A stretch of DNA of 64,000 nucleotides, taken from the IMG/VR virus record IMGVR_UViG_3300046170_000519, positions 1-64,000 of that record; one strand, 5' to 3'. The stretch's first letter is position 1, and every line of letters begins with the position of its first letter. Below are positions 20,758-40,506 of this stretch, piece by piece. The notes under the pieces were generated by a model. That model made no database searches, had not been told where the DNA came from, and worked only from the letters and a program-made list of their open reading frames with translations. The position numbers and the translations under genes are program-made.

Positions 20758-21796
20758 CTTCTTTACTAATACCTAAAACTCTAGCCTTCCAGCTATCCAT
20801 TCTCTCAAGCGAATCAGCTTCTTCTTTTATTAATAATTTTTGTTTTTCTGCCATCTCTACCATTCTAGTTCTATCTTCTTCATTTTGAAACACCTTCACT
20901 AACGATAATATAGATGCATTATCTTTATGTTTATTTTTGACACGCTCTTTTCTATCACCATTTAAACGCGCGATTAATGTTTCTTGCCTCTTTTCGCATT
21001 GATTATATTCTTCGCTCTTTGTTTTTAATAATTCCGCTAATCTAACAGTCATATCTTGTTGGTCTTCACATTCTTCAAACATGCGATTTAATTTATCTAT
21101 TGCTTTACTGATATTTTTTAAATGTATATAATCCATACAAACATTTATATATAAATTTAATTCATCACTTGTTAAGTCTGGTTTATCCCATACAGATCTT
21201 ATATATTCAGCCTCAAAGAGTTTTCTATCATCTCCAGATGTATAAGTATTAATAACTTGAATAAAACGAGGAGCCGAAAGAAATTTCATCGAACTTTCTA
21301 AATTGTCTAAATCGCCTCTATTTAGCTTTTTTTCATCTAGATCCTCTTGGCAGTATTCATTTACCTTTTTAACTACCCTAGAGATTGATTTAGGGGCAAA
21401 ATATTGGCTATTTAAGGCTGTTTCTGAGGAATGTAATAACCTGAAGTCAACATCTTCGATGAATTTAGCAACCTCGGTAACTTCTTTACTTAAATTAGTT
21501 ACATTTATTTCTGGAAAAATAATTTTTGAAATTTCATAAGCCGTCATTCCTTCTTTCGCATATTGAATCATAAACTCTTTCTGTTCTTGAGAGAATGTTA
21601 TATCTTCTTTTTTTTCTTTTTTTGTTGTATTGTAATTTAACTCTCTATCAACCAAAAATTTTCTAACAGCTCTCCCCTCTTTTGTTCTTCCATCTAAGCT
21701 TTCATCATTGAATGTCAATCGGGTTAATTCTATTAGGTCAGGAACCCTATCATAATTCTCAATTATAAAATTAGCTTGTATTTCTGTAAGTTTCAT
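20747..21796 (-). CDS. Hypothetical helical protein, candidate terminase small subunit (349 aa)
   Basis: HTH-like N-terminus and coiled-coil C-terminus upstream of terL; function is inference only. Confidence 0.5.
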   Translation of the reverse strand: MKLTEIQANFIIENYDRVPDLIELTRLTFNDESLDGRTKEGRAVRKFLVDRELNYNTTKKEKKEDITFSQEQKEFMIQYAKEGMTAYEISKIIFPEINVTNLSKEVTEVAKFIEDVDFRLLHSSETALNSQYFAPKSISRVVKKVNEYCQEDLDEKKLNRGDLDNLESSMKFLSAPRFIQVINTYTSGDDRKLFEAEYIRSVWDKPDLTSDELNLYINVCMDYIHLKNISKAIDKLNRMFEECEDQQDMTVRLAELLKTKSEEYNQCEKRQETLIARLNGDRKERVKNKHKDNASILSLVKVFQNEEDRTRMVEMAEKQKLLIKEEADSLERMDSWKARVLGISKEDAI

Positions 21797-22524
21797 AATA
21801 TATCTTGTTTTTTAATCACTTGTTTTGCAATAATTTTAAATTGTTTTTCTGCATTTTTAATTTGTTTATAACCTGCAGATCTACCTTTTTCATTAGAGAT
21901 ATACCCTAATTTCTTAGCTATTTCATCATGTGGTAGATGAAGAATATAAAGCATTTCGTAAATTTTAAATTGCTTAGGGGTTAACTTGAGCTCCATAGCT
22001 TCATGCAATCTTTGAGCAGATAAATCTAAATTAAAACCATTAGAACATGTAATTCTATCTTCTTTATCTGTTATTGTGGCTGCCAAATTTATATCAAAAG
22101 AGCTTTTTTTTCCTACAAGCCATTTTTTATATAATGGACATGTTTTATCTTGGAGCCCCGATTTTGTCCAGCTGCAAAAATTTTCATTATCATTATAATT
22201 ATCTTGAGCTCCAGAAGAATTAAATGGACATTGAACACAGGGTTTAACAAAATTTCCATAATAATTTCTTAATAAATTTTTAAGCTGATTAGATATGATT
22301 CTATTCAACCATGGCTTCATAGGGCGTTTTTGATCCCACAAAGACCATTTTTTTTCAATATGCACTAATATTATTGACTTTATATCTTCCCACGATATCC
22401 AGCTAATGGCATTTAGAAACCACTTACCCCTCCTTTTCTCTACACAGGCTTCTACTTCTTCAAAACTCTCAATAAATGTTATTTTTCTAGGTCGTCCCCT
22501 CTTCTTCATTCTGTTTTGGCCCAA
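21793..22524 (-). CDS. Phage-encoded RNA polymerase sigma factor (ECF-like; 243 aa)
   Basis: Region-2-like EDIKSIILVHIEKKWSLWDQKRPMKPWLNRIISNQLKNLLR and region-4 HTH LTPKQFKIYEMLY...HDEIAKKLG. Confidence 0.75.
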   Translation of the reverse strand: MGQNRMKKRGRPRKITFIESFEEVEACVEKRRGKWFLNAISWISWEDIKSIILVHIEKKWSLWDQKRPMKPWLNRIISNQLKNLLRNYYGNFVKPCVQCPFNSSGAQDNYNDNENFCSWTKSGLQDKTCPLYKKWLVGKKSSFDINLAATITDKEDRITCSNGFNLDLSAQRLHEAMELKLTPKQFKIYEMLYILHLPHDEIAKKLGYISNEKGRSAGYKQIKNAEKQFKIIAKQVIKKQDIL

Positions 22525-23425: not shown

Positions 23426-24157
23426 TCAAGATTTTAATTCTTCTAGTTTTTTAACTATATATTTTAATATCTCGCTTCTTTTTATATCTTTATGATCAAA
23501 ATCAAAAGTATGTATCCCTTGCCTTTTAGAGCTTTCTTCATCAAAGAGTTCTTTAATTGGAGATAAACCACTCTTTCCGTTTATATCGCTTTGCATTATA
23601 TCTCCGCAAATAAACATTTTTGTGTTTTCTCCTATTCTCGTAATTAAAGTTACTAACTCTTTTAAACTGAAGTTTTGAGCTTCGTCGGCTATTACGATTT
23701 GATCGTTTAAGCTGGCTCCTCGTAAATAGTTGATTGGCATAGCTGTAATTACACCTTTGTCAACTAAATTTTTTGCTGTTGATATTGGTATTAACTCATA
23801 CAGTTTATCATTAAGCGGCATCATAAATGGGCAAAATTTCTCATCAACATTTCCTGGTAATGCGCCCATGCCCCTGTCAGCACTTTCAATGATTGTTCGC
23901 ACATAACTAATACTATAGTTATTATTCATATTAAATAATTGAAGAGCACCGTAAATAGCCATAAACGTTTTACTTGTTCCAGCAGGACCGTTTATAAAAA
24001 TTATCTTAGTATCTCTGTCAAATATTAACTTCAACAACTCTTGTTGTTTATCAGAAAAATCTATTTTTTTGAGCTTCACTTTTGTCTTAGACATGGAGCT
24101 CATGATTTTTTCTATTTCTTGATCGTCTTCTATTTCAGATTTTTTGCGTCTTGGCAT
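23426..24157 (-). CDS. phoH: PhoH-family ATPase (start revised to MPRRKK)
   Basis: GPAGTSKT Walker A, GALPG, YLRGASL, IADEAQN, GDIMQSD, DIKRS motifs. Confidence 0.93.
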   Translation of the reverse strand: MPRRKKSEIEDDQEIEKIMSSMSKTKVKLKKIDFSDKQQELLKLIFDRDTKIIFINGPAGTSKTFMAIYGALQLFNMNNNYSISYVRTIIESADRGMGALPGNVDEKFCPFMMPLNDKLYELIPISTAKNLVDKGVITAMPINYLRGASLNDQIVIADEAQNFSLKELVTLITRIGENTKMFICGDIMQSDINGKSGLSPIKELFDEESSKRQGIHTFDFDHKDIKRSEILKYIVKKLEELKS

Positions 24158-24373
24158 GTCTATCAAAGATATACTATATGATACACAATTAAAATTCAAG
24201 TGTCGCCGATTTTTTTTTGAAAAATGTTATTCACAAAAGATCGAAGCTTTGATTTTTTGAGAAAAACCACCCCCCCGCCAAATCTGTCAAGCTTAATCTG
24301 TAAAAAATTCAAAAAACGGGGGACATCCTTAAATTTTTAAAAATAAAAATAATAGTTTTTTTTTTGAATTAGT

Positions 24374-24408: not shown

Positions 24409-25117
24409 ATGAACATTACTAAAGGATTAAAAGTCGGAAGCCTTTACCACTCAAAGGTTAATAATAAAGTTGTTCGTCTCGTGTCTATCGACAGAGTCGG
24501 ATCTCAACGGATCGCAACGATCAAGCATCATGCGCAAAATCATCTTTTCGAGTCAGAGGTTTTTATCTCTGACCTAATCAAGGCAACTGCCGATCAAGTC
24601 AAGGCTTACTTTAAAAGGTAAGTCTTGACACAACACACAAGGAAAGGTAAAAAAGAAATGATTAAAATACTACGAAACCCTAACTTTTCAAATTGGTTTG
24701 ACATTCGCCTTTTTGGGGAACTAATAGACAACGCAAAATCACAAGCAAAAGCCTTGCAAATTGCAAAACAAATAAAACGAAACAATCCACATTTTCAAAT
24801 CGTAACAGAGGGAGAAACAAATGCGTAAAGTAACAGAAAGAATTAAACAAGCCTTTGAGCAAGGCACTTCTCTAAAGGTCGGCAACACAAGAACAGACGG
24901 CACAAGCGTCTTCTTGCATGGTAACGAGATAATCAAACGAGATGAAAGCGGGCTTGTAATGGCTACGCTTGCAGGATGGAACACGCCAACCACAAGGGAA
25001 AGAATCAACGGCATAACAGGATTGGGCATCTACCAAAAGAACTTTGCTCCTATGCTAAACGGGCAAGAAATTGACGAATACGATTGGGTGACGCATACAG
25101 AGGAGGTGTATGTATGA
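24409..25117 (+). CDS. Three small early genes (24409-24621, 24658-24828, 24821-25117), hypothetical
   Basis: Tightly packed co-oriented ORFs after a leaderless promoter; the third has the motif HGNEI...TLAGWNTPTTRERIN. Confidence 0.7.
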
Positions 25118-25175
25118 CTTGCATAATCCTCTTATCCATTGCATTATACTTCTACTCTAAATAAAATAAGCCGCC

Positions 25176-25248
25176 TAAGTGACTGAATAACAAGCACTTA
25201 GAGCGCGGCGCTGCCGCGTGACCTAAGTACTTAATAAACAACAACTTA
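25176..25248. repeat. Double-arm IHF-consensus element E1 (25+23+25 bp)
   Basis: TAAGTGACTGAATAACAAGCACTTA-gagcgcggcGCTGCcgcgtgacc-TAAGTACTTAATAAACAACAACTTA. Confidence 0.9.
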
Positions 25249-25364
25249 CGAAAGTCTCGTACAGAAATCATGCCAATTCATGTAATAGAATAATGCAATA
25301 AAATAGTTGCCAAATAATTCAAAATAAATTTGACTTTAGTTAATAGATGCTTTAGTTTATATAT

Positions 25365-26273
25365 ATGAAATCAATATACAATACAGACACAGAAGAATTT
25401 ACTTTTAACTTTTTAATGAGCATCGAGGGTGCAACTTATAGAATCGAAGCCGTAGCTTGTCAAGATGACATCTTGCTGAGCGAACAATATCGTCCCGAAT
25501 ATATCGACGTTTATATGGCTAAATTAATAAATGACAAAACAGGTGAATTTATAGAATCAAGCATCTATAAAAACACAGATCTTTTAAAGGTTGTGAGCGA
25601 CAAGCTCACAGAAAGGCTAATTACAAATGCAAGCAAAACTTGGTTTGTTACTGATGCGCCAAGGCTTTTCCGTGAGCAATTCGACACTTGCCTTGAAATA
25701 ATGTTTCAAAAATAATTCAAAATAAATTTGACAAAAGTTAAAAAATAGACGATAGTAAGGTATGACAGAAATAAAAATAGAATTCGACGAAGTAAACAAT
25801 GAAGAGTTTTCCGCCTATGCTGAAGTAGGCGAGGAATACTACGAACTGCAAGGCACAACATGGACAGATGAGCAAGAGTCTCTTTATGGAGATCAAGTCT
25901 CAGCCGTTCACTTAGTGGCTTACTTTGATACTCTTGAAAGCGTGAAGCGCTTCGATGGCAACGGCAAACAAATTGATTCAATGAACTTGGATCTTATCAA
26001 AGCAATTAAAAAAGAACTTAATAAAAACATGGATGAAGAGATAGGATCACACTCTTGCCGTGTTGACTACTCGCCACAATACTACGACCTAATCTAATCA
26101 TGGAATACATAAAAAACACGATCAACAAATTAAGAACTCAAATCATGGCATTGAATAGCGAAAGAATCAAGGCAATGAAATTGAACAATAAAAAGAAGGC
26201 TTCAGACATTGAAGCTATACAAATAGAATTAGACAATCAAATAGCACGATTGGAAGGTCTCGCACACCGATAA
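25365..26273 (+). CDS. Early genes 25365-25715, 25762-26097, 26100-26273, hypothetical
   Basis: Leaderless promoters TTGACT-17-TAGTTT-6-ATG and TTGACA-17-GATAGT-5-ATG, each preceded by the identical 23-mer aaataattcaaaataaatttgac; the last ORF (57 aa) was translated by hand. Confidence 0.75.
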
Positions 26274-26284
26274 GATCAGCCCCC

Positions 26285-26357
26285 TAAGTTACTGATAACC
26301 AAGCACTTAGGTCAGGGCGCCGCGCTGCGCTGTAAGTGCTTAATAAGCAACTACTTA
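26285..26357. repeat. Element E2 (25+23+25 bp)
   Basis: TAAGTTACTGATAACCAAGCACTTA-ggtcagggcGCCGCgctgcgctg-TAAGTGCTTAATAAGCAACTACTTA. Confidence 0.9.
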
Positions 26358-26455
26358 TATAACTCCATAAATCTAGTTTAAAATTGCATAATCCCGCCAC
26401 CACTAAAAAGTTGCACTATTTGACTATTTGGTATTTAAATAAAAAAACAAAAAAA

Positions 26456-27236
26456 ATGAAAATAAATCCGTATTTGCTTGCAAAACACGCACTACTAGTT
26501 TACCTTGTTTTTATGGATAAGATCAGAATCAATCATGTAATCGGAGTCAATGGACTTCTTGAATTTTCACGCGACGAAAAGTCGGGCATATCCCTGTGGG
26601 AAGATGTTGCAAATAATGTTTGGACTTGGGATCAAATAGTCGAAGCATCTAAAGATGTAACAAATAAAGAAATCATCGACGCCATGAAAGTAGATGGACA
26701 CATCACTGAGCCATGCGTAAATGATCTTTTAAATATACTAAAATAAAATTTGCAATTATATCATAACTCGTTTACCTTATATATATGAAAGCTAATACAG
26801 ACACCATCTCAATCGTTGACCTAATCGAAAACGAATCATATAAAAATCACCAAGCTTACAACTTAGCAAAAGCTCTCTTGGACATTGCGGTTCAAGCAAG
26901 ATCCATAAAAAACACAGTTTCAGAAAACATTTCAGGCGATGGAAAAGTGTTCAATGAAAATGTTGATAAATGGATGACCGAAATCAACAACATTGCAAAC
27001 AATGTGGTAAGGGAAGAAATGTTAACCAAATAAGGAGGGAATAAAATATGAATAAACAACAAATACTAGAAAAAATTTCCGCCCTTCACGAAAAACTCAA
27101 GAACTCTGTTCTTGCTCCTGCTGATGCCGTTGCTATCCGCAATGAAATCGGAGAGCTTGAGGATAAGGTCTCTCTTCTCGACTTTTACAACGACGAAGGG
27201 GATTATGATTATGGCTACCACTCCCAATGGGAGTAA
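26456..27236 (+). CDS. Early genes 26456-26746, 26785-27033, 27048-27236, hypothetical
   Basis: 26785 has TTGCAA-17-TACCTT-6-ATG; 27048 has an SD (aggagg). Confidence 0.7.
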
Positions 27237-27305
27237 GCCTTTGATAATCAACTACTTACATCGCCGCGCAGCCAAGCACCTAAGTGCTTGGCAGTCAACA
27301 ACTTA
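27234..27305. repeat. Element E3 (25+22+25 bp) at the convergence point
   Basis: TAAGCCTTTGATAATCAACTACTTA-catcgccgcGCAGCcaagcacc-TAAGTGCTTGGCAGTCAACAACTTA; both ends are stop codons of converging genes. Confidence 0.92.
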
Positions 27306-27716
27306 CTCTTCTAGTAGCCATGCATCGAGAGCTTCTGTGTCGATGTCTGGGTCATCATATTGAGCCCCATCAGGTGTGGACTCGAATCCATATTCAACTT
27401 TAAGATGTTCAACTAAATCTTTATAATATGCAAACCTGCGAGATAAAAAATAAAGATGTTCATCATTCCCTAACCAAAGAGCAACATTCCAGGTCGCCCA
27501 GTTTTTCCAGCCGTTGTAAGTATCCATAATTTAATAAACGAGTTGTGAGTTAATAGCTAATTGATCAATCATATCTTGAATATGTTCTTTTTCATTTTCT
27601 GCATTGATTACTAACTGCATCGAGTTAATACAACCTTGATCTGCGGCATCTGTCTCATTGTTAATAATCTGCTGAAGTTCGTTAATTCTGTTAAATAAAT
27701 CTTTTAATGTTTCCAT
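27303..27716 (-). CDS. Early genes 27303-27527 and 27531-27716, hypothetical
   Basis: Leaderless promoter TTGCAA-17-TATCTT-6-ATG(27716); first has the motif NGWKNWATWNVALW. Confidence 0.75.
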
Positions 27717-27759
27717 GATAGTAAGATAATTAAAAATAGAAATAATTGCAAGAAAAAAA

Positions 27760-27966
27760 TTAAAATTTTAATGCTTTTAGCGATGTGTTTCTTTTTAACC
27801 ATCTACGCAATGGGTGAAATGCTCTTGCACTAAAATGAGCGAGATACTGCTCTCCGTTTTTGGCAAGGATCATATGCCCGCTTGCAGTTTCACGGATCTT
27901 TTCGATTTCAGGGCATTTCCGTAATTGTTTTAACACTTTGCGAGTTCCACTTTCTGAATGTTTCAT
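27760..27966 (-). CDS. Small basic protein, possibly HicA-like (68 aa)
   Basis: Leaderless promoter TTGTGT-17-TAGCTT-6-ATG; RETASGHMIL...H pattern. Confidence 0.6.
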   Translation of the reverse strand: MKHSESGTRKVLKQLRKCPEIEKIRETASGHMILAKNGEQYLAHFSARAFHPLRRWLKRNTSLKALKF

Positions 27967-28027
27967 AAGTACAAGCTAAAGCAAAAAATAAAAATACACA
28001 AGAAAAAAGTGAATAAAAATGCTTTCG

Positions 28028-28100
28028 TAAGTCTTTGATTATAAAGCTTTTAAGGGTTAACGCAGCCGACTGCCCTAAGTGCTTGATAATCAACTACTTA
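28028..28100. repeat. Element E4 (25+23+25 bp)
   Basis: TAAGTCTTTGATTATAAAGCTTTTA-agggttaacGCAGCcgactgccc-TAAGTGCTTGATAATCAACTACTTA. Confidence 0.92.
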
Positions 28101-28300
28101 GGACAGCCACACATGCAGACTACGACAACTAATACGACTAAAAAATTATTTGCGAGTTTTCGTATTTGCTATTTTTAGTTTTAATCTTTTGTATATATAT
28201 ATAATAGTATTGACAAGATAATAATTATTGGAATCATTCTTCTTTTAAATCTTGCCACATTAAGTAAAAAACAAAAAGCCAAGGAGTGAAAAATAATAAT

Positions 28301-28984
28301 TCAACTATCATAATATATTCCTTTCATTTCATCGGATAATCCGATTTCTTCATCTTCCTCATCAACATCTTCAGCGACATCAGTAAGTAAGAATTGAGTT
28401 TCATCTGTAATGTCATCTCTCTCGACATCTTTTAATCCATGCTCGACAACTAATTGTTCTGCTTGTAAGTCTGCGACTAATTCTAATACTGAGGAATCAG
28501 TTGGCAAACCTTTGGATTCACGATGTGCGTTAGCGATAACTGCGAGTCTTTGTTCTTCTGTCATAGTAATAATATAGTTTAGTTTTGTTTAGTCGTCAAG
28601 CCCTAATTCTCTTCTAAATTCTGCTTTGTCTTCAATTAGCTCATCAACCCAAACGCTTCCTTCGACTTGAGCTTTTGCCATTAGGATAGATACTTGAGCA
28701 GGAGATTGCCAACCGACAACATCATCAGAAGGAGAAAGAGGAATCATGCCGTTTTTATCGTAGATTGCAACTTCGTACAAACCTTCTTTTAAGCTTCCAT
28801 ATAATCCTTTATAGTCATCTTTACCTGCAATAACAGAAATTTCTAGTCCGTTGCCAAAGTCAAGTTTTGCATGGACTGCTTCATCATGATAACGATGTGG
28901 TTTAAAATCAAGATCGTCAAAGTCTAGCATTGAAGGTTTTGGTTGAAATTGTGAGATTGAGTTTGGTATGTCGTAGTTAATCAT
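28301..28984 (-). CDS. Early genes 28301-28564 and 28589-28984, hypothetical acidic proteins
   Basis: Each has a leaderless promoter (TTGACG-17-TATATT-6-ATG; TTGCGT-17-TAATGT-6-ATG). Confidence 0.8.
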
Positions 28985-29046
28985 ATAAACACATTAAACT
29001 CTTTTAACAATTAACGCAAGAAAAAACTTAAATAAAAATGCTTTCG

Positions 29047-29118
29047 TAAGTCGTTAACTGTTAGGCAGTTAGCTTTGGCGGCAGCCAGCCACCTAAGTGA
29101 TTGACTATAAAGGATTTA
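29047..29118. repeat. Element E5 (25+22+25 bp)
   Basis: TAAGTCGTTAACTGTTAGGCAGTTA-gctttggcgGCAGCcagccacc-TAAGTGATTGACTATAAAGGATTTA. Confidence 0.88.
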
Positions 29119-29119
29119 C

Positions 29120-29890
29120 CTATCTTAATACTGTTGTCAACTCATTTTGAAATTTTTTTGCTTCAACTAAATCTTTTAAGTCAAAACTAATTGCAACAAG
29201 ATTGTCGTTAATATTCTTCATTACCTTGACAAGGTCGTCCATGTTTGCATAACGTCTATGCTCTAACATCTCATCTGATAATCCGTCAATGGCTTGTTTA
29301 ATTCCTTTTAATTCTTCTTTCATTTTAATGTTTACCTTTCTTTATAAAATTTTCTAAATAATATGCAACCCACTCAATAGCTTCATTTTGTTTTGATGCC
29401 TCCTCTTTCATTTCAGGATCGTCAATAACGTTTTGATTGGCTAGGTCTAATACAATTTCTAATGCTGTTGTGATATTCATGATATATAAGCTGTTACTTT
29501 GTTGTGTGTTAATAAAACTTCGTCCGCATAGTACGCAAACCTTTCGGTGTCCTTCTCAACGAAAGTTTCATACTTGTAGGGATTGTACGTTACCTCGACT
29601 TCCCTAGTGGCAACTTGTGGATTACGAGATACATTTTCTGCATCTTGAAGATACCCTTTGACAAAAGCATGAACATTCTTACGCTTCTCTCGAAGAACTT
29701 TTTCTCTGCCCTTAATATCGACATGAAAATAGCAATCCCATAATCCAATAGCATGATCCTTTGGGATATGAGCTTTGACTAATCCATGTTGCTTAATGCT
29801 CCAACAATCTTTGTGAAGATTCTTGTAAACATAAACAGGGCGATTCTTTTTAATTCTATATCGTGGGTCTTGCTGGTTTCTTAGTATCAT
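29120..29890 (-). CDS. Early genes 29120-29323 and 29477-29890 (a short ORF probably lies between), hypothetical
   Basis: 29890 has TTGCTA-17-TAGTAT-6-ATG; motif VYVYKNLHK...KRKNVHAFVKG...VTYNPYK. Confidence 0.75.
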
Positions 29891-29952
29891 GTAGACATAC
29901 TAAGCCATTTTTTTAATTATAGCAAGAAAAAAGTTTAGTAATTTTACTTACC

Positions 29953-30024
29953 TAAGTATCTTGTATTCAAGTACTTATGTTTTTGCGCAGCCGCCGCCAC
30001 AAGTGCTTGATAATCAAGGCTTTA
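29953..30024. repeat. Element E6 (25+22+25 bp)
   Basis: TAAGTATCTTGTATTCAAGTACTTA-tgtttttgcGCAGCcgccgcca-CAAGTGCTTGATAATCAAGGCTTTA. Confidence 0.9.
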
Positions 30025-30201
30025 GTACCCTAACCACTCAAGAACTTTTTGGGCTGAGTACCCTTCCTTGTCACCCATGTCTTCAAAAAATTCAATAATT
30101 TCCTCACTGGAAGTAATGCCGTGCCTGGCTAATTCCTCTAAGGCACGATCTTGTGAAATGTCAATTCCTTGGGCTGAGTCAAAATAAGTTTCTTCATTCA
30201 T
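30022..30201 (-). CDS. Hypothetical acidic protein (59 aa, below the ORF-track cutoff)
   Basis: MNEETYFDSAQGIDISQDRALEELARHG...QKVLEWLGY*; its stop is the last 3 bp of E6. Confidence 0.7.
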   Translation of the reverse strand: MNEETYFDSAQGIDISQDRALEELARHGITSSEEIIEFFEDMGDKEGYSAQKVLEWLGY

Positions 30202-30216
30202 GGCTTTAATTATAGA

Positions 30217-30942
30217 TTAATGAGCTAAATATGCAATACCTTTTTTGCATCCTTTGATAAAACATAAGTTGCAATTATGAGCTTTACAAGTTGCAAGAAC
30301 CTTGCCGTCTTCGCCCTTAACATAAGTTGCGGGGCAAACAAAATGACCATCTTGCTCGGCTTGCTCTTTTGAGCTATAGACGGAAGTTCCCGCATCTAGA
30401 CCATCGATTTGTGGAGCGGGTTCATCAACATACAAGGCACTTGGTTTTAAGCATACATTCTTTAAACTTGCGAGCTTGCGAAGTGAAGGTAATTGACTAT
30501 CCCTTGCCCACTCACGAGTTGGAAACCAAAAGCGAATGGTGGGAAAGTTTTCGCAAATCTTAATCCACGCCTCAATATACTTTGGGGAAAACAAGTCGCC
30601 TGAATCATGAACGCGAAAAAGATCTGTGTTGACATTCTTTAAAACTTTTTTGTTGCCTTGCTTGTCAAAATACTTTGCGGTAATTTGCTTGGATATCTCA
30701 TTTACAAAAGTTTGCCCATTGTCTCGATGCAAAGACTTGGTGACAAAATTTGCCTTGTCTTGCAAACTTTGTTTAACATTGTTAAACATATAAAAACCTT
30801 TGCAAGCATAACAAGCATCACAAATAAACTTTTTTGCTTTGTCTTTGACTTTTGCCATAAGTTGAGCTGCTGGGCAATACTTGAAAGCGGGAATGTTAAA
30901 GCCTAAGCAAGGCATTTTAGAAGGATTTGATAGTAAGTTCAT
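30217..30942 (-). CDS. Gp88-like phage protein (241 aa)
   Basis: SKMP...CP...CDACYA and FRVHDSGDLF...FWFPTR motifs; leaderless promoter TTGCAT-17-TAGTTT-6-ATG. Confidence 0.65.
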   Translation of the reverse strand: MNLLSNPSKMPCLGFNIPAFKYCPAAQLMAKVKDKAKKFICDACYACKGFYMFNNVKQSLQDKANFVTKSLHRDNGQTFVNEISKQITAKYFDKQGNKKVLKNVNTDLFRVHDSGDLFSPKYIEAWIKICENFPTIRFWFPTREWARDSQLPSLRKLASLKNVCLKPSALYVDEPAPQIDGLDAGTSVYSSKEQAEQDGHFVCPATYVKGEDGKVLATCKAHNCNLCFIKGCKKGIAYLAH

Positions 30943-30969
30943 AATAGTAAACTAAAATAATTTTAACAA

Positions 30970-31170
30970 TTATGCAAGCGAAAAAATAAGATCTTCAAAG
31001 AAATCTGGTTCTAAGCCGAATTCGCTGGTAAATGTCTCTTCCCATTCAAACGGATCTCCGCCCATTGCAATGTCTTCAGACATTTCACGAAAAAAGGTTG
31101 CGGTTTGGTGAATAGCATCTTCACGGGAAAGCCCGTCACGCTCCATAAGTATCTTGATTATTCTTTTCAT
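30970..31170 (-). CDS. Hypothetical protein (66 aa)
   Basis: TTGCGT-17-GATATT-6-ATG; motif ILMERDGLS...EFGLEPD. Confidence 0.75.
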   Translation of the reverse strand: MKRIIKILMERDGLSREDAIHQTATFFREMSEDIAMGGDPFEWEETFTSEFGLEPDFFEDLIFSLA

Positions 31171-31231
31171 GATAACAATATCTCACAAAAAATAATTTAA
31201 CGCAAGAAAAAATGAATTAAAAATACATCCG

Positions 31232-31303
31232 TAAACCCTTGATGCTTAAGCAGTTAGCTCGCGCCGCAGCCGCTTCCATAAGTGCTTAATAATCAAATAC
31301 TTG
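31232..31303. repeat. Element E7 (25+22+25 bp)
   Basis: TAAACCCTTGATGCTTAAGCAGTTA-gctcgcgccGCAGCcgcttcca-TAAGTGCTTAATAATCAAATACTTG. Confidence 0.88.
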
Positions 31304-31322
31304 TGAAACACTAAATCAACCC

Positions 31323-31350
31323 AAAAAAAAAGCCCCCCAATCGGGGGGCT
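31323..31350 (-). terminator. Rho-independent terminator
   Basis: agcccccc-aatc-ggggggct hairpin with a 9-nt U-tract on the minus strand. Confidence 0.9.
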
Positions 31351-31373
31351 AAAACGAAACAACAAACCAATAT

Positions 31374-32246
31374 TTAAACCTCTATCAATTCGCCCTCAGC
31401 AACTTCTATGTCAATAGTATTATCAACATGATTATCTATATCGAAATCGACATAACTATCGAGAACAGAATGAAGAGCGTCTGAACGATTTGGCAAGGCA
31501 ACTAAGTTACCTTTATAAATTTCAGTAAAAGCATTATAGAGAGAATTTACATTACGATCCTTAAATTCTAAATGGTCACTTGACTCCCATTGATCTGCCA
31601 CATCAAGAATTTTTGACTTAGGTAAAGCCCCTGCACGAACTGCTTTGATGATTAAATCATGAGCAAGAACATTCCCGATAGAATGATTTTTATAAGCATT
31701 GATTCTTTCATCTTGTCCATGCCAAAAGCCAAACAATTTACCCAAAGCACGATTGATCATAAAATCAAGATCGTTAAGTATGTTGCGAGTATGTCTACGA
31801 GCAAGTTTAATAGTGTTTGTGAAAATTAAATTATCGCAAACAAATGGAGCATCACCTGCGCAAAGTCCTGCAGGAAAAGTTTTGTCATGAGAATTGCGAA
31901 CTCCTACGACACAACCACGATCTGATTCGTCACGATCAGGATGATCAACAGAGAATAGACCAAAGTAATGTTGGTTATCTCTAGCGAGAGAATGTAATTC
32001 GTCTTGAATAGTAAACCCTCTCTTGACAAGAGAATCTTTAGTACGAACAACAAGCTCGTCATGAGCAATGGGCTGATGAGAAACGGCAAGCTCACCTGTT
32101 CTCTTGTTTGGTTTGTTGCGCATTGTAGGTAATGGAGTTGGTACTGCTTGTACTTGATCAAAATCTACGATTGTGCGATTGCCTCCACAAATGTGTAAAT
32201 CTACGGATTTGCGAGGAGCGGTATTAGTGTTTTCTTCTGTATTCAT
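31374..32246 (-). CDS. DUF932-family protein (290 aa)
   Basis: YFGL...VGVRNSHDKTFPAGLCAG...FVCDNLIF...RRHT motif; TTGACA-17-TATATT-6-ATG. Confidence 0.7.
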   Translation of the reverse strand: MNTEENTNTAPRKSVDLHICGGNRTIVDFDQVQAVPTPLPTMRNKPNKRTGELAVSHQPIAHDELVVRTKDSLVKRGFTIQDELHSLARDNQHYFGLFSVDHPDRDESDRGCVVGVRNSHDKTFPAGLCAGDAPFVCDNLIFTNTIKLARRHTRNILNDLDFMINRALGKLFGFWHGQDERINAYKNHSIGNVLAHDLIIKAVRAGALPKSKILDVADQWESSDHLEFKDRNVNSLYNAFTEIYKGNLVALPNRSDALHSVLDSYVDFDIDNHVDNTIDIEVAEGELIEV

Positions 32247-32284
32247 GATAGTAATATAATAGTTTTAATGTTTTTTGTCAAGAG

Positions 32285-32518
32285 TTAATTTTTAGAATAT
32301 TGGTTTTCTTCTGAGGTTAGCATTTCAAATGCATAAGCTTTTTTAGCTATATCTCGTAAGGCTAAACCAACCCAACTAATTTCATCTAAATCTTCTACGG
32401 AAAGATTTTTAGCATGAGGTGTTACTAGAATATCCCAAATGGATTTCATGCAATCTTTGTTTAGCTCTAAAGAGTTGAAATCGGGCAACTCATCCACATT
32501 TTGTTTAATTACATACAT
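32285..32518 (-). CDS. Hypothetical protein (77 aa)
   Basis: ORF track; SD aaggag upstream. Confidence 0.65.
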   Translation of the reverse strand: MYVIKQNVDELPDFNSLELNKDCMKSIWDILVTPHAKNLSVEDLDEISWVGLALRDIAKKAYAFEMLTSEENQYSKN

Positions 32519-32633
32519 AGTTTAGATTCTCCTTGTGTTTTAGTTTTCTGTGTATCGTTTTAGTTTTGACTTTGTGAGGTCTTGATTTAGTGAAAAGAAT
32601 GGTTTTTCTGATCTTAATGTCTCTCGCTTTCAT
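32505..32633 (-). CDS. Very basic 42-aa peptide, ArfA-like pattern
   Basis: MKARDIKIRKTILFTKSRPHKVKTKTIHRKLKHKENLNYVCN*; dedicated promoter TTGCTA-17-TAGTAT-6-ATG. Confidence 0.65.
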   Translation of the reverse strand: MKARDIKIRKTILFTKSRPHKVKTKTIHRKLKHKENLNYVCN

Positions 32634-32696
32634 GTAAACATACTAAGCTAATTTTTTAATTATAGCAAGAAAAATAACAAATAATTTTAACTTTTT

Positions 32697-32768
32697 TAAT
32701 TCCTTGTGTATCAAGCACTTAGAGCGCGCGGCAGCCAGCCACATAAGTGACTGATAATCAAAAGGTTA
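32697..32768. repeat. Element E8 (25+22+25 bp)
   Basis: TAATTCCTTGTGTATCAAGCACTTA-gagcgcgcgGCAGCcagccaca-TAAGTGACTGATAATCAAAAGGTTA. Confidence 0.9.
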
Positions 32769-32927
32769 TGATCTACCTGAATAAAGCTTATATAATAGAT
32801 TGTCGTGCATCGCTCTTTTTTCCTTATAATCTTTCGATTGGTCCCCCGCTTGCTCTCTAATGGCTAGCATGTGACCTAATTTTCTTACAATTTGCTTTAA
32901 GGTTAAGACTTCTTTATTTTTTTTCAT
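32766..32927 (-). CDS. Hypothetical protein (53 aa, below the ORF-track cutoff)
   Basis: MKKNKESLTLKQIVRN...LYKLYSGRS*; its stop is the last 3 bp of E8. Confidence 0.6.
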   Translation of the reverse strand: MKKNKEVLTLKQIVRKLGHMLAIREQAGDQSKDYKEKRAMHDNLLYKLYSGRS

Positions 32928-32929
32928 AA

Positions 32930-33160
32930 TTAGATTTTATTAAGAGATATAATTTGGTCGTATCGAAAGGATCGTATGCCGTCCCTATTTAGACAAAAAG
33001 ATCTAAAGCCAACAACCCCCCTTCCTTCTTGTTGATTGCCAAACTCATTTTCGTGCTGAGGTTTGGTTATTGTGTACATTTCAGTTCTGCCGTCTTTAGT
33101 CTGATAAACAACTTGATATAACGGATTAAACCAACGATAAATTTTAGTCAATAATTTCAT
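32930..33160 (-). CDS. Small WYL-like (SH3-fold) protein (76 aa)
   Basis: VVYQTKDG...GFRSFCLNRDGIRSFRYDQI resembles the WYL RxFRxDRI signature. Confidence 0.5.
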   Translation of the reverse strand: MKLLTKIYRWFNPLYQVVYQTKDGRTEMYTITKPQHENEFGNQQEGRGVVGFRSFCLNRDGIRSFRYDQIISLNKI

Positions 33161-34205
33161 CTTCGACATCCTCTCTTGCGGGGTTTTGGTTGTAGTGATT
33201 GTAAGCATCGCAAGCTGAATCTGCCGACTCGAAACTCACGGATAGAATATCTCTTGGAATATCGTACGGAAACCAAGGTGTTTCTGATTCTTCAAAAAAT
33301 AATTCCCATTGCTCAGTATCTTCGTTGTATTCAGGTAAATCTAGCGGACTGCCGATGCAGGTTGCTTCTATGTAATTATTCATTTTCATTATCCTCTATG
33401 TTATAGACTCCGAAGTGAGACGCAAGCTCTAAAATCATTTTATCTTTGTTAAAATAACGATAGGCAAAAGAAAGTAAATCCTCTTGTTGTTTTCTCGTAT
33501 GCCCATCTCTAAGTTCATCATAAATCTCAAAGATATTCATGTTCCAATTCCAACTCTCTACTCTCGCTTCTACTTGTGATGCTGTCATTATACTGCCCTT
33601 TCGTTTACTTGTTCTAACATAAGTTTAAATTGATCAAAAACTTTTTGCTTGCTACCTTTGAGACCAAACTCTTGTTTGATGATAGAATAGCAAGATCTGC
33701 CTCGACTCATTTGCATACCTAAAGTCTCAAGCCTTAAACCTCTGAGAAGAGTTTTGTAGCGAAACATTTCGATTTGTTCGGGTGTGTCTAATACTGCTGT
33801 CATAATTTTCCTTGTGTTATAGTTGTGCTGATTGAAAAGATGATTCTATTCTACGTTCATCTTGTAATGCTGTCAAGTCCCTAATGATATCTTCTAAAGA
33901 TTCATCCTCCGATTGGAATGAGCTACCCTTCGGGAACTTGTCAGGGTGGCGTTCGCATTGGTCGAGACAAACTGTTGACATGGGATCCGACCATGCGAGG
34001 TTGCCTCTAACGATATCCATAATTGATTCTGATAATGTCATTGTTTTGCCCTTTCGTTTTGGTCGTCTACAATCTTTGCGAGGCGAAGTAATTCTTGGGT
34101 TACTTCTGCTTTTGCGGTGTTGTTTGCTTGTGGGCTTTTCAACACCTCGACCATAACAGGAACGAGTGCTGACCATGTTGGTGTGATATCTATTGTTTCT
34201 TGCAT
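33144..34205 (-). CDS. Early operon of small hypothetical genes: 34038-34205, 33817-34041, 33588-33803, 33376-33588, 33144-33389
   Basis: Leaderless promoter TTGACA-17-TAGTGT-6-ATG(34205); ATGA overlaps couple the genes. Confidence 0.7.
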
Positions 34206-34266
34206 ATAAACACACTAAGGGAATTTTTAGTTGCTGTCAAATAAAAAGAAAATAAAAATGCTTTTG

Positions 34267-34339
34267 TAAGTTGTTGAATTTTAAGCAGTTAGGGTTTATC
34301 GCAGCGCTCCGCTTTAAGTGCTTGACTATCAACACTTTA
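34267..34339. repeat. Element E9 (25+23+25 bp)
   Basis: TAAGTTGTTGAATTTTAAGCAGTTA-gggtttatcGCAGCgctccgctt-TAAGTGCTTGACTATCAACACTTTA. Confidence 0.9.
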
Positions 34340-35035: not shown

Positions 35036-35052
35036 GAGTGTTCAGAGGAAAT

Positions 35053-35240
35053 TGGTGTGGGGAGGGATTACTGTATACCCTCAAGTTTTCGGCGTGAACA
35101 TCAGTTCATGGTGTACCTACTTCCAACCACAAATTAGACATGGTATTTGTCATCGGCTCATTCGATTGAACTCTACCGCCCCACCACAGGGAATTTGCAT
35201 ACCTTAACCCGCTCACGACAGGTTTATTCGGTCACCCACA
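35053..35240 (-). ncRNA. Candidate tRNA-like structured RNA (~188 nt, 3' ACCA)
   Basis: TATAAT 6 nt upstream; 5' GUGGG pairs with 3' CCCAC-A-CCA; T-arm-like GAGGG/CCCUC; several internal hairpins; terminator downstream; no ORF. Confidence 0.65.
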
Positions 35241-35364
35241 GGAAGGATTATAAGCCCTTCCAAAGTGATAAAAAATATTAAAGAACAAAAATTTTGAGGC
35301 TATTTTATTTATTTGAGTCGCCTCTTCTCAATCATGGATGATACTTACTATAATACTAAAAAAA

Positions 35365-36057
35365 TTACCTTTTGTCAACTATTAAATGGTTTCTATCAAA
35401 TATAATTGTATTTTCATCGATTAGTTTTTTATACTTTATTTCCTTTTTAAAATCTTCGAGTAATAAAAATTTGTAACCTAATTTAGATTCTTCTTTTGTT
35501 CTGTAAGCATGATATTCACTTTCCACTATAGGCAAGCTTCTGCACATCAATGCTTCATAAAATCTGAAACTCCAAGTAGCATCACCTGCTGGACACAGGC
35601 AGTATTTACTTTGACACATTATTTGAAGATATTCTTTATCATTTTCTAAGGGGTTGTATCTTAAATTTTGCAAATCTTTAGTGAGGGTGCGATTATTTCT
35701 AGGGTTATATCCTTTACCCGAATTTGTATAATCAAATGAACCTAAACTTTTCCAATTAGGTTCATCATCTGTATTTAAAAAATACGATTTGTTTGTAAAA
35801 TTTTTTTTTGCAAATTCTATAACCCACTGTCTGTTATTTTTAATTCCTTTTGAATTTATTGTCCCCATAAAGCAATAGTCATAAATCTTTTTTCTTGGCA
35901 ATTTGTGGACTTGTTGGTAAAATCTCTTCGAGAATTTAGCTATCGGAGGGTTTGCAACCACATTTTCAGGATTTAACCCCTCTTCCCTTAAAGCTTCTTC
36001 CATCTGATATTTAAACTCTAAATATCCAGAACCTCCTTGAAATTTGCTAGGACTCAT
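35365..36057 (-). CDS. Exostosin-like (GT47) glycosyltransferase (230 aa)
   Basis: MCQSKYCLCPAGD..WSFRFYEAL.C..LPIV signature. Confidence 0.75.
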   Translation of the reverse strand: MSPSKFQGGSGYLEFKYQMEEALREEGLNPENVVANPPIAKFSKRFYQQVHKLPRKKIYDYCFMGTINSKGIKNNRQWVIEFAKKNFTNKSYFLNTDDEPNWKSLGSFDYTNSGKGYNPRNNRTLTKDLQNLRYNPLENDKEYLQIMCQSKYCLCPAGDATWSFRFYEALMCRSLPIVESEYHAYRTKEESKLGYKFLLLEDFKKEIKYKKLIDENTIIFDRNHLIVDKR

Positions 36058-39224: not shown

Positions 39225-40409
39225 TTAAAAGGGAGTATCTTCAATAACTATTTGACGAGAACCTAAAGGTAAGAGAGAGGCATCATAGCTAGAGTCAACC
39301 ATCACATCGTCTAATTTTGAAACTATTTTAGCGACGCCATTATACCCCACATGATTATTTTTGCATATCCTTAAATCAGCAATTTGTTTAATAGTTGGAT
39401 TTATATTTGATAAATGTTTTTTATTAATATAATTTTTTATAGAAATCTCTACTAAATCTGAATCTTTTACTAAATCATCATCATCATCATCATCATAATT
39501 ATCATGTTCATCAAGATCATATTCAATACCCGAACCATCATCAACATTTGATTCCATATCTACATAATCTGAATCATCATCGTAATTTTCATCATCATTA
39601 TCATCATCTGATCCATAAATAGGCTTATTAGCCTCGTAGACAGGTTTATTTAACTCTTTTCTTGCATCAGTAATATCAGAGATTACCTTATACTTAGAAA
39701 CTCTAAGTTTTTGAAAATCGCAATCAGTTGGTACAGATACTGCATCAGCAGGATCAAACTCTACTAGAAGCAACTTTCCACCTTCTCCTGCCCAACTATC
39801 AGCATAATCAAATGAACCAACATGAAGACCAAAAGAGCAATGATTATCCTTATTATCATCTACACATCTGCGAGCAACTTCAATTGTTGCACCAACCTCA
39901 TTGAGAATTTGATGGCGAGCATTGGTTTTGCCTTGCAATACGATAGTGTCAGCATTGCCTGTTGTACTCCAATAATCGGATTGTACACCTTTGTAGCCCA
40001 AAACTTTACCTTCGGGAGTATTCGCAAGAGACTTATAACTCATAAAAGAATAAAGTTCATTTACTGAATTTGCACTTGGATTAGCTTGTAAGCGAGTAAT
40101 AAAATTGGTGAGGGGGGCAGAATCTTTCATTCCTGCACGAAGCATATCGAGCAATTTATCAACAACAACGCCATGTAAACGATGACCTTTATAATAAACA
40201 ACTTCGTCTTTGACTTCAATATCGCCTTCAACAAAATTTTCAACCGCCTTAACAACATCAATAAGATCACCAAGATCGTCATACCTAGCATCAAGAATAG
40301 CTTTCTTGGCAAGTTGGAAGTTCACATGATCCTTGCGGATTGTGTGGGGTTTACCTTCCCAAAAGATTGTAATTGAATTTTCTGTTAACTGATATGGTAC
40401 TTGATTCAT
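39225..40409 (-). CDS. rIIB: RIIB-like protein (394 aa)
   Basis: FITRLQANPSANSVNELYSF...TPEGKVLGYKGV...RRCVDDNKDNHCSFGLHVG...DAVSVPTD....KLRVSKYKV; adjacent to rIIA. Confidence 0.85.
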   Translation of the reverse strand: MNQVPYQLTENSITIFWEGKPHTIRKDHVNFQLAKKAILDARYDDLGDLIDVVKAVENFVEGDIEVKDEVVYYKGHRLHGVVVDKLLDMLRAGMKDSAPLTNFITRLQANPSANSVNELYSFMSYKSLANTPEGKVLGYKGVQSDYWSTTGNADTIVLQGKTNARHQILNEVGATIEVARRCVDDNKDNHCSFGLHVGSFDYADSWAGEGGKLLLVEFDPADAVSVPTDCDFQKLRVSKYKVISDITDARKELNKPVYEANKPIYGSDDDNDDENYDDDSDYVDMESNVDDGSGIEYDLDEHDNYDDDDDDDLVKDSDLVEISIKNYINKKHLSNINPTIKQIADLRICKNNHVGYNGVAKIVSKLDDVMVDSSYDASLLPLGSRQIVIEDTPF

Positions 40410-40506
40410 CTTTTCTCCTTTTTTTTGTTTAATATATCTATATCTTATATTGATTGTTAGTTATTGTCAAGTTTTTTTTAAAAAAGTTTTGAGGGGAGAG
40501 AATAGC

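What the first reader, a model, noticed from the sequence alone, without database searches (positions are those of the whole stretch)
25201..34314. Invariant GCNGC pentamer at the centre of every element spacer
Seen: the spacers are GC-rich in an AT-rich genome and otherwise vary, but positions 10-14 read GCAGC (E3-E9), GCTGC (E1) or GCCGC (E2, which has GCTGC right after). The GCAGC/GCTGC orientation follows the strand of the flanking genes. Established: GCWGC/GCNGC are common 5mC methyltransferase/restriction targets (TseI/ApeKI, Fnu4HI types). Inference: the two bent arms could present a central site for methylation sensing, cleavage, strand exchange or binding of a phage factor. A simple restriction-decoy role is weakened because GCWGC is not avoided in the structural genes.
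Basis: partly seen in the sequence, partly recalled or inferred. Interest (0 to 1): 0.6.

Follow-up and report, generated by a model that had tools for sequence, protein, structure and literature searches.

The report
Crossover core of phage cassette boundaries
The GCAGC at the middle of nine 73-bp repeats in this large phage is real, is kept as GCNGC in many related phages, and sits where small early-gene cassettes have been swapped between genomes, so it is more likely a break-and-rejoin core of a gene-shuffling element than a methylation decoy.

Summary
Nine elements lie at window 25176-34339 and nowhere else in the 205,857-bp phage. Each is a 25-bp arm, a 22-23-bp GC-rich spacer and a second 25-bp arm. 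Eight carry GCAGC and one GCGGC at the exact centre (p < 5e-5 by shuffling).

Ten related phage contigs each hold one syntenic cluster of 6-11 such elements between phoH and rIIB/rIIA. A central GCNGC, usually GGCNGCC, is kept in 58 of 63 elements in seven contigs, although spacer length (21-25 nt) and sequence drift freely. Four contigs use other centres (GGGGC; CARGGGAGG).

Arms and spacers show no compensatory changes, so they act as duplex-DNA protein sites, not hairpins. The arm palindrome also occurs as single sites in Bacteroidota and WOR-3 genomes, which points to a host factor.

The cassettes between elements are permuted among three genomes. The junction elements are chimeras, and the parental switch falls at the centre in four of five mapped cases.

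Best reading (confidence about 0.42): the pentamer is the cleavage or exchange core of PeSL-like cassette boundaries. The enzyme is unknown. Methylation was not testable.

The parts
25176..25248 (+). E1: arm 25176-25200, spacer 25201-25223, arm 25224-25248. Central GCTGC at 25210-25214. Sits in the rightward (+) gene array.
26285..26357 (+). E2: arm 26285-26309, spacer 26310-26332, arm 26333-26357. Central GCCGC at 26319-26323, with GCTGC directly after at 26324-26328. Its orthologue in G001 has a central GCAGC.
27234..27305 (-). E3: arm 27234-27258, spacer 27259-27280, arm 27281-27305. GCAGC at 27268-27272. Fills the gap between convergent genes. Its terminal TAA and TTA serve as the stop codons of 27048-27236(+) and 27303-27527(-). 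No promoter follows it.
28028..28100 (-). E4: arm 28028-28052, spacer 28053-28075, arm 28076-28100. GCAGC at 28062-28066.
29047..29118 (-). E5: arm 29047-29071, spacer 29072-29093, arm 29094-29118. GCAGC at 29081-29085. Boundary between cassettes B and A.
29953..30024 (-). E6: arm 29953-29977, spacer 29978-29999, arm 30000-30024. GCAGC at 29987-29991. Boundary between cassettes C and B.
31232..31303 (-). E7: arm 31232-31256, spacer 31257-31278, arm 31279-31303. GCAGC at 31266-31270. A separate canonical terminator (31350-31331, minus strand) lies just upstream in the direction of transcription.
32697..32768 (-). E8: arm 32697-32721, spacer 32722-32743, arm 32744-32768. GCAGC at 32731-32735. 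Boundary between cassettes E and D.
34267..34339 (-). E9: arm 34267-34291, spacer 34292-34314, arm 34315-34339. GCAGC at 34301-34305.
27964..28001 (-). Promoter-like module TTGnnn-17-TAnnnT-6-ATG, 26 nt beyond the E4 arm. Equivalent modules begin at 29019, 29925, about 31205, 32668 and 34240 (all minus strand), 26-28 nt beyond E5-E9.
29120..29890 (-). Cassette B (three small genes, including an L5 gp82-like protein at 29477-29890). It occupies three different array positions in G000, G001 and G002.

Best explanation
The pentamer is the conserved core (GGC-N-GCC) of a 71-75-bp, dyad-symmetric, double-stranded DNA element. The element forms the boundary between independently promoted small-gene cassettes in the phage's hyperplastic early region. 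The two 25-bp arms are binding sites for a host-lineage protein, probably architectural and IHF/HU-like. The GC-rich spacer is a sequence-free, stable duplex that holds the core exactly midway between the arms. The core is where DNA is broken and rejoined when cassettes are excised, inserted or swapped.

Shown: the anatomy of the elements; conservation and exact centring of the core; absence of base-pair covariation; the arm motif in bacterial genomes; cassette permutation among relatives; chimeric junction elements that switch parent at the centre.

Inferred: that a protein recognises the core; that breakage is site-specific rather than homology-driven; that the single asymmetric central base pair (a pyrimidine on the coding strand in 29 of 32 elements) gives the exchange its polarity; and that the arms bend DNA. 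The enzyme is not identified.
For: (1) GCAGC or GCGGC sits at the exact centre in 9/9 elements, p < 5e-5.
(2) Ten related contigs each carry one cluster of 6-11 elements in the same place, between phoH and rIIB/rIIA.
(3) Central GCNGC is present in 58/63 elements of seven contigs against about 0.3 per contig in shuffles. It stays centred with spacers of 21, 22, 23 and 25 nt. Offsets -3 and +3 also carry 1.1-1.2 bits.
(4) Between orthologous elements of G000 and G001 (flanks 85% identical) the spacers differ in length and sequence apart from the core.
(5) There is no intra-arm or inter-arm covariation, and spacers are no more self-complementary than shuffles (mean z -0.16).
(6) The arm pattern gives at least 120 hits in bacterial genomes where about 1-10 are expected, mostly Bacteroidota and WOR-3. 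There it is a single arm in AT-rich flanks with no covariation.
(7) Cassette order differs: F,E,D,C,B,A in G000; F,E,B,D,C,A,X in G001; F,B,E,D,new,C in G002.
(8) The parental switch in junction elements maps to (-3,+4), (-3,+13), (-1,0) and (+3,+5) relative to the central base. These come from two different lineages.
(9) The stretch of identity at the core is only 7-9 bp. It is shorter than in the arms or the promoter, where homology-driven exchange would be expected, and where PeSL crossovers were mapped (PMC2839356).
Against: No tyrosine recombinase, serine recombinase or GIY-YIG nuclease gene was found in the genome. The two HNH genes and the methyltransferase have no homologue in five related contigs.

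One mapped junction (G004 e10 against G006) switches at the arm/spacer border, not at the centre. A further junction is ambiguous.

Only about three to four independent rearrangement events were mapped, with few informative sites per half-spacer.

G006, a close relative of G004, has lost GCNGC in 8 of 10 elements yet keeps the elements. The exact pentamer is therefore not indispensable.

The pyrimidine polarity could be inheritance plus transition bias.

In G000-G002 the element lies a fixed 26-28 nt from a promoter, which also fits a purely regulatory role.
Confidence: 0.42

Rival explanations
1. Regulatory operator or upstream activating/insulating site. A phage or host transcription factor binds the GC core between two host nucleoid-protein sites and controls, or insulates, the adjacent early promoters. 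Crossovers at elements are then a by-product of repeated DNA.
For: In G000, G001 and G002 six elements per genome lie 26-28 nt upstream of a TTGnnn-17-TAnnnT-6-ATG promoter module. The elements are duplex protein sites. The arm motif lies about 104 nt upstream of an orthologous gene in two Pedobacter species.
Against: E3 and its orthologue have no promoter. E1 and E2 sit 81-120 nt from the next promoter. The fixed spacing is absent in G003-G005. This reading does not explain why parental switches cluster at the core.
Confidence: 0.25
2. Restriction-modification link. The central GCWGC/GCNGC is a target of a host or phage 5mC methyltransferase or a Fnu4HI/TseI-type endonuclease. It would be kept as a methylation-sensing site, or as a deliberate cut site whose breaks seed recombination.
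For: GCNGC and GCWGC are palindromic words of type II kind (established knowledge). The genome is under strong pressure against short palindromes: CCGG 0 observed against about 160 expected, and GGCC 59 against about 136. The 35-72 kb block has 0 GCWGC against 14-18 expected. In 24-72 kb, 9 of the 12 GCWGC are the element centres. A C5-methyltransferase gene lies at 74.3-75.1 kb. A cut at the centre would also give centre-mapped junctions.
Against: There are 150 GCWGC genome-wide, above expectation. The methyltransferase has no homologue in G001-G005, which keep the pentamer. The central base varies (A, G, C) within single genomes such as G002, which fits GCNGC but not GCWGC. No methylation data could be obtained.
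Confidence: 0.15
3. Single-strand structure. The element folds in RNA or in replicating single-stranded DNA into one long hairpin with the pentamer at the tip. It would act as a terminator, an RNA-processing site, or a hairpin-tip target for an SbcCD/gp46-47-type nuclease.
For: As single strands, six elements fold into an arm1:arm2 hairpin with the pentamer at or next to the apical loop, z from -3.7 to +0.1. All nine lie at the 3' ends of genes, and E3 lies between convergent genes. Tip cleavage would place breaks in the spacer.
Against: There are no compensatory changes at variable arm positions. For example, G4/C22 is broken in 22 of 75 arms without compensation. Spacers are not self-complementary. 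No U-tract follows the arms. Canonical GC-hairpin plus T-run terminators exist separately, one directly before E7. Rfam has no match. A loop sequence need not be conserved for tip cleavage.
Confidence: 0.1
4. No function of its own. The pentamer is a relic of common descent, or of gene conversion among copies, in a spacer selected only for G+C richness.
For: All copies descend from one ancestor. Identical half-element patches shared by two elements within G001 show that conversion occurs. G006 has largely lost the pentamer.
Against: The rest of the spacer is randomised between orthologues at 85% flank identity, while the core is kept in 58/63 elements across seven contigs and four spacer lengths.
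Confidence: 0.06

Closest known systems
PeSLs (promoter-early stem-loops) of T4-type phages (Arbiol et al. 2010, PMC2839356; Comeau et al. 2014, PMC4122927)
   Same: Repeated composite intergenic modules in a hyperplastic region of small ORFans. Each is coupled to a sigma-70-like early promoter and an AT-rich upstream tract. Insertions, deletions and relocations of ORF cassettes between close relatives have their end points in the modules. The authors themselves speculated that a protein might target the GGGG...CCCC stem.
   Different: The upstream part here is a 73-bp, sequence-conserved, two-arm element with no stem covariation and no U-tract, not a short terminator hairpin. It is conserved across distant relatives and shares its arm with host-lineage genomes. 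Switch points map mostly to the 7-bp core, whereas PeSL mini-circle crossovers were mapped in the promoter/AT-rich part. The phage is not a recognisable T4 relative, although it has rIIA, rIIB and PhoH.
Integron gene-cassette arrays (attC sites)
   Same: An array of small gene cassettes, each bounded by an imperfect inverted-repeat element whose outer parts are conserved and whose middle is variable. Cassette order is permuted between relatives.
   Different: There is no intI-type integrase (PF00589 absent). Cassettes carry their own promoters. There is no attC-type single-strand fold signature or covariation. Exchange is at the centre, not at an R-box at one end.
IHF binding sites and IHF-containing repeats (RIP/BIME-1, Correia elements)
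   Same: Each arm reads as two inverted copies of WATCAANNNNTTR (consensus as in PMC10380432). The repeated intergenic elements combine palindromes with an architectural-protein site.
   Different: The arrangement is inverted: two IHF-like sites flank a GC core, rather than palindromes flanking one IHF site. Binding is untested. The host lineage appears to be Bacteroidota, where a heterodimeric IHF is not established.
Core sites of site-specific recombinases (loxP, FRT, dif, serine-integrase att sites)
   Same: Dyad symmetry around a short central region whose asymmetry sets polarity. Exchange occurs at the centre.
   Different: The conserved arms lie 8-10 bp away from the core, not next to it. 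No known recombinase gene is present. The element is much longer.
Type II restriction/modification words GCNGC (Fnu4HI type) and GCWGC (TseI/ApeKI type)
   Same: The sequence of the pentamer; an odd-length palindrome.
   Different: There is no evidence of cleavage or methylation here. The word is common elsewhere in the genome.

Membership tests
PeSL | Located in a hyperplastic region rich in small ORFans | tested here: met
   25-35 kb holds about 30 ORFs of 50-290 aa, mostly without family matches. The region is flanked by conserved phoH and rIIB/rIIA.
PeSL | Stem-loop that terminates transcription, placed directly upstream of the promoter | tested here: not met
   No covariation in arms or spacer and no U-tract. 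Separate canonical terminators are present. Terminator activity itself was not assayed.
PeSL | Strong sigma-70-like early promoter as part of the module | tested here: met
   In 6 of 9 elements a TTGnnn-17-TAnnnT module begins 26-28 nt beyond the arm. E1-E3 lack it at that distance.
PeSL | Indels and replacements between close relatives end in the modules | tested here: met
   Cassette B relocation and cassette X insertion between G000 and G001. Further permutation in G002, G005/G007 and G004/G006.
PeSL | Exchange by homologous recombination in the promoter/AT-rich part | tested here: not met
   4 of 5 mapped switches lie at the 7-bp core, and one at the arm/spacer border.
Integron attC array | Adjacent tyrosine-recombinase integrase | tested here: not met
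   PF00589 has no match in the 205,857-bp genome.
Integron attC array | attC folds as single strand, with structure conserved and sequence not | tested here: not met
   Sequence-conserved arms without compensatory changes.
IHF-type binding site | Match to WATCAANNNNTTR | tested here: met
   The arm consensus matches on both strands. 11 exact matches fall in the 9 elements, out of 46 in the genome against 31 in shuffles. Consensus from PMC10380432.
IHF-type binding site | Bound and bent by an IHF/HU-family protein | not testable with these tools
   No HU/IHF gene in the phage (PF00216). A host protein would be required.
Intrinsic terminator | GC-rich hairpin followed by a U-run | tested here: not met
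   The scan finds such sites at 31350-31331(-) and 35035-35003(-), but not in the elements.
Type II R-M target (GCNGC/GCWGC) | Word avoided or methylated in the phage genome | tested here: inconclusive
   150 GCWGC against 100-113 expected overall, but 0 against 14-18 expected in 35-72 kb. Methylation is not testable.
REP/REPIN | Inverted doublet of a genome-specific palindrome mobilised by a RAYT transposase | not tested
   The doublet architecture resembles a REPIN. The arm is multi-copy in some MAGs (22 or more contigs of one Microscillaceae MAG) but is shared across phyla. No RAYT search was made.

The most novel reading that the evidence does not exclude
These phages carry an integron-like, site-specific cassette-exchange system of a new kind. 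Its parts would be a GGCNGCC core (CARGGGA in a sister lineage) held between two host-nucleoid-protein sites; a single asymmetric central base pair that sets polarity; and cutting and rejoining by an enzyme of no recognised recombinase family, or by a host enzyme.
Probability: 0.22. Interest if true: 0.85.

Novelty: new variant of a known kind. Interest (0 to 1): 0.62.

Why it matters
How large lytic phages reshuffle accessory early genes without wrecking essential ones is an open question. So far PeSLs are the only described device, and their mechanism (homologous or targeted) was left open. This phage family offers a sharper case. It has a long, sequence-defined boundary element conserved over distant relatives. 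The cassette order can be read in several genomes. The exchange point can be mapped to a few bases. That makes the question 'is there a dedicated recombination activity?' directly testable. The result also links a phage element to a palindrome that is widespread in Bacteroidota genomes and whose binding protein is unknown.

Tried and rejected
I did not pursue it by other means, so no read-level evidence exists.
- Megablast of the region against named phages found no match.
- Rfam found no family for the elements; the only hit was a manA RNA next to the cluster.
- Literature search by arm sequence strings found nothing relevant. The only resemblance was the streptococcal FabT operator TTGATTATCAA.
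- A phage HU/IHF gene is absent.
- Tyrosine recombinase, serine recombinase and GIY-YIG genes are absent or insignificant.
- Two HNH genes and the C5-methyltransferase are present but not shared with relatives.
- The cluster-resident 290-aa protein gave a weak TorI/excisionase hit (E 0.07; 0.47 with a profile). It resolves to DUF932, so I rejected it as a lead.
- The L5 gp82-like and GP88-like proteins have no solved relatives.
- The protein atlas gave no host information.
- Spacer-hairpin, intra-arm hairpin and inter-arm hairpin models were rejected for lack of covariation.
- A fixed element-to-promoter distance as a family-wide rule was rejected.
- The T4 MotA-box resemblance of TGCTT in the arms and a sigma-54 reading of the spacer were considered from memory only and not pursued.

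Full report
**Observation.** The window is the first 64 kb of a 205,857-bp IMG/VR virus record with 34% G+C. Nine elements lie between 25176 and 34339. Each has a 25-bp arm (consensus TAAGTnnTTGATwATCAAnnACTTA), a 22-23-bp spacer of 73% G+C, and a second arm. A profile search finds no other copy in the genome. The finding's coordinates run from the first base of the E1 spacer to the last base of the E9 spacer. When E1 and E2 are turned to the orientation of the others, GCAGC occupies one register in 8 of 9 elements and E2 has GCGGC there. Shuffling each spacer 20,000 times never gave more than 4 identical pentamers at one offset. On the coding strand the pentamer is GCTGC in all seven elements with co-directional neighbours.

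**Surroundings.** The region is a run of about 30 small genes, nearly all without family matches. It is bounded by phoH (23426-24199) on one side and by rIIB and rIIA homologues (39225-42795) on the other. Genes 24409-27236 run rightward and genes 34959-27303 run leftward. E3 fills the gap where the two arrays meet, and its terminal TAA and TTA are the two stop codons. Six elements (E4-E9) are followed, 26-28 nt beyond the arm, by an AT-rich tract and a TTGnnn-17-TAnnnT module whose ATG comes 6 nt after the -10 hexamer. Canonical GC-hairpin plus T-run terminators exist separately, one directly upstream of E7.

**Duplex site or folded strand.** As single strands the elements fold into one long arm-to-arm hairpin with the pentamer near the tip (z from -3.7 to +0.1). 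Across 75 distinct homologous elements, however, the variable arm positions pair no better within an arm or between arms than in shuffled controls. Frequent one-sided changes are left uncompensated. Spacers are no more self-complementary than shuffles (mean z -0.16). Rfam has no match. I therefore read arms and core as sites on double-stranded DNA. Each arm equals two inverted copies of the IHF-type consensus WATCAANNNNTTR. The phage has no HU/IHF gene.

**The arm is a host-lineage motif.** Of the 80 listed, 51 are in Bacteroidota (22 in one Microscillaceae MAG), 24 in WOR-3/Hydrothermia MAGs and 3 in Verrucomicrobiota. In those genomes the motif is a single arm in AT-rich flanks (26% G+C), again without covariation and without a T-run. 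Only one 1.8-kb unassigned contig shows the two-arm, GC-spacer form. The arms therefore look like sites for a protein of the host lineage, and the promoter style also fits Bacteroidota. The GC spacer with its core is the phage-specific part.

**Relatives.** An 18-mer from the arm recovered 66 viral loci. Ten further contigs (G001-G010) each carry one cluster of 6-11 elements over about 10 kb, at the same place between phoH and rIIB/rIIA wherever those genes lie on the fetched part of the contig (checked in G001-G005).

Central GCNGC, by contig:

| Contig | Elements with central GCNGC |
|---|---|
| G000 | 9/9 |
| G001 | 10/10 |
| G002 | 9/11 |
| G003 | 4/6 |
| G004 | 9/10 |
| G008 | 7/7 |
| G009 | 10/10 |
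| Total | 58/63 |

Shuffles give about 0.3 per contig. The pentamer stays at the exact centre with spacers of 21, 22, 23 or 25 nt. Positions -3 and +3 add G and C, giving GGCNGCC. Between orthologous elements of G000 and G001, whose flanks are 85% identical, spacer length and sequence differ but the core is kept. The pentamer is not universal. G006, a close relative of G004, has GGGGC or CGGGC in 8 of 10 elements. G005, G007 and G010 have CARGGGAGG (0 of 25). On the coding strand the central base is a pyrimidine in 29 of 32 elements. That could reflect function, or inheritance combined with transition bias.

**Cassette shuffling.** The segments between elements behave as units. In the direction of transcription the order is F,E,D,C,B,A in G000; F,E,B,D,C,A,X in G001; and F,B,E,D,new,C in G002. 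In G001 the three new junction elements are chimeras of the G000 elements, as reciprocal exchange within the element predicts:
- A|C is the left half of E5 plus the right half of E6.
- D|B is the left half of E8 plus the right half of E5.
- B|E is the left half of E6 plus the right half of E8.

Informative sites place the parental switch at (-3,+4) and (-3,+13) around the central base. The third junction is ambiguous. In another lineage, one element of L027/G007 is the left half of one G005 element joined to the right half of the next. The switch falls inside the central pentamer (-1,0), and the roughly 160-nt piece between them sits elsewhere in the array. Two G001 elements share an identical arm plus half-spacer patch that ends at (+3,+5). 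One counter-example, G004 e10 against two G006 elements, switches at the arm/spacer border. So four of five mapped switches fall on a 7-9-bp core. That core is a shorter stretch of identity than the arms or the promoter tract, where PeSL crossovers were mapped. This is why I favour a break targeted to the core over plain homologous exchange. The number of independent events is small, about three to four.

**Enzymes and restriction.** The genome has no tyrosine recombinase, serine recombinase or GIY-YIG gene. Its two HNH genes and single C5-methyltransferase have no homologue in G001-G005. GCWGC is not avoided overall (150 observed, 100-113 expected). It is absent from 35-72 kb (14-18 expected), and in 24-72 kb nine of the twelve sites are the element centres. 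That block is also depleted in GGCC, TCGA and ACGT, and CCGG is absent from the whole genome and from G001-G004. A restriction-type cut at the core therefore remains a live sub-hypothesis.

**Comparison and verdict.** The closest known kind is the PeSL of T4-type phages. It shares the hyperplastic setting, the coupling to early promoters and indel end points in the modules. The element here differs in anatomy (a two-arm, sequence-conserved duplex site, not a terminator hairpin), in breadth of conservation, in sharing its arm with host-lineage genomes, and in where exchange occurs. It is not an integron: there is no integrase, the cassettes have their own promoters, and there is no attC fold. 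I rate it a new variant of a known kind. Methylation is untested, and the enzyme is unknown.

Noticed in passing
window 35052-35261 (-): Full-length manA RNA motif (RF01745, 88 bits), followed by a strong intrinsic terminator at 35035-35003(-). It lies downstream of a GT47-like glycosyltransferase gene (35365-36057). It is 97% identical to G001, against about 85% for the flanks.
   Followed up: partly
whole genome G000 (window included) and contigs G001-G004: CCGG is completely absent (0 against about 160 expected in G000) and GGCC is strongly depleted (59 against about 136). This is a lineage-wide restriction-avoidance signature.
   Followed up: partly
window 35000-64000, continuing to about 72 kb of the genome: A 37-kb block of small leftward genes has no GCWGC (14-18 expected), 2 GGCC (about 20 expected), and few CCAG/CTGG, TCGA and ACGT. 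The matching blocks next to the cluster in G002, G004 and G005 are also depleted. It resembles the site-free first-entering DNA of phages such as T5 (from memory).
   Followed up: partly
window 20000-64000, e.g. 24374(+), 25330(+), 26750(+), 28001(-), 29925(-): Promoter-like modules TTGnnn-17-TAnnnT with the ATG only 6 nt after the -10 hexamer, which implies leaderless or near-leaderless mRNAs. There are 107 in the genome, concentrated at 20-70 kb. The -10 often reads TAnnTTTG, as in Bacteroidota promoters (from memory).
   Followed up: partly
window 27234-27236, 27303-27305, about 30022-30024, about 32766-32768: The terminal TAA/TTA of element arms serves as the stop codon of the neighbouring gene (both sides of E3; also E6 and E8). 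Elements and genes are therefore packed without any spacer.
   Followed up: yes
window 28028-52 versus G001 element at G001:11475-11558: The promoter-side arm of E4 and the corresponding arm in G001 are reverse complements of each other (23 of 25 positions). A whole quasi-palindromic arm has been flipped in place.
   Followed up: no
genome G000 about 145,000-164,000 (outside the window): About 19 kb of TCTGAG-type short repeats at 45% G+C, with T 44% and A 10% on the + strand. It is open in several frames for 1,300-2,000 codons, so it is either a giant repetitive gene or non-coding repeat DNA.
   Followed up: no
L162:7829-7853 and L173:7071-7095 (Pedobacter miscanthi, P. aquatilis): In both species the single arm motif lies just downstream of mnmG/gidA and 104 nt upstream of an orthologous Big_5/CarboxypepD_reg protein gene. 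This is a conserved chromosomal site for whatever binds the arm.
   Followed up: partly
L102, L107, L108, L119, L129, L135 and others (WOR-3/Hydrothermia MAGs): In these genomes the arm motif is embedded in a longer repeat of about 120 nt (a GGGGGG...CCCCCC stem on one side, ...TTATTGGACAAAGC on the other) that is present on many contigs. It looks like a MITE-like family built around the same palindrome.
   Followed up: no
window 21793-22524 (-): A 243-aa protein conserved next to phoH in all six compared contigs has a weak match to phage sigma factors (phrog_1740, E 5e-5). It may be a phage-encoded sigma factor.
   Followed up: no
window 51699-52562 (-); genome 74285-75097 (-) and 83906-84514 (-): Two HNH endonuclease genes and one C5 cytosine methyltransferase gene. 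None has a homologue in G001-G005.
   Followed up: partly
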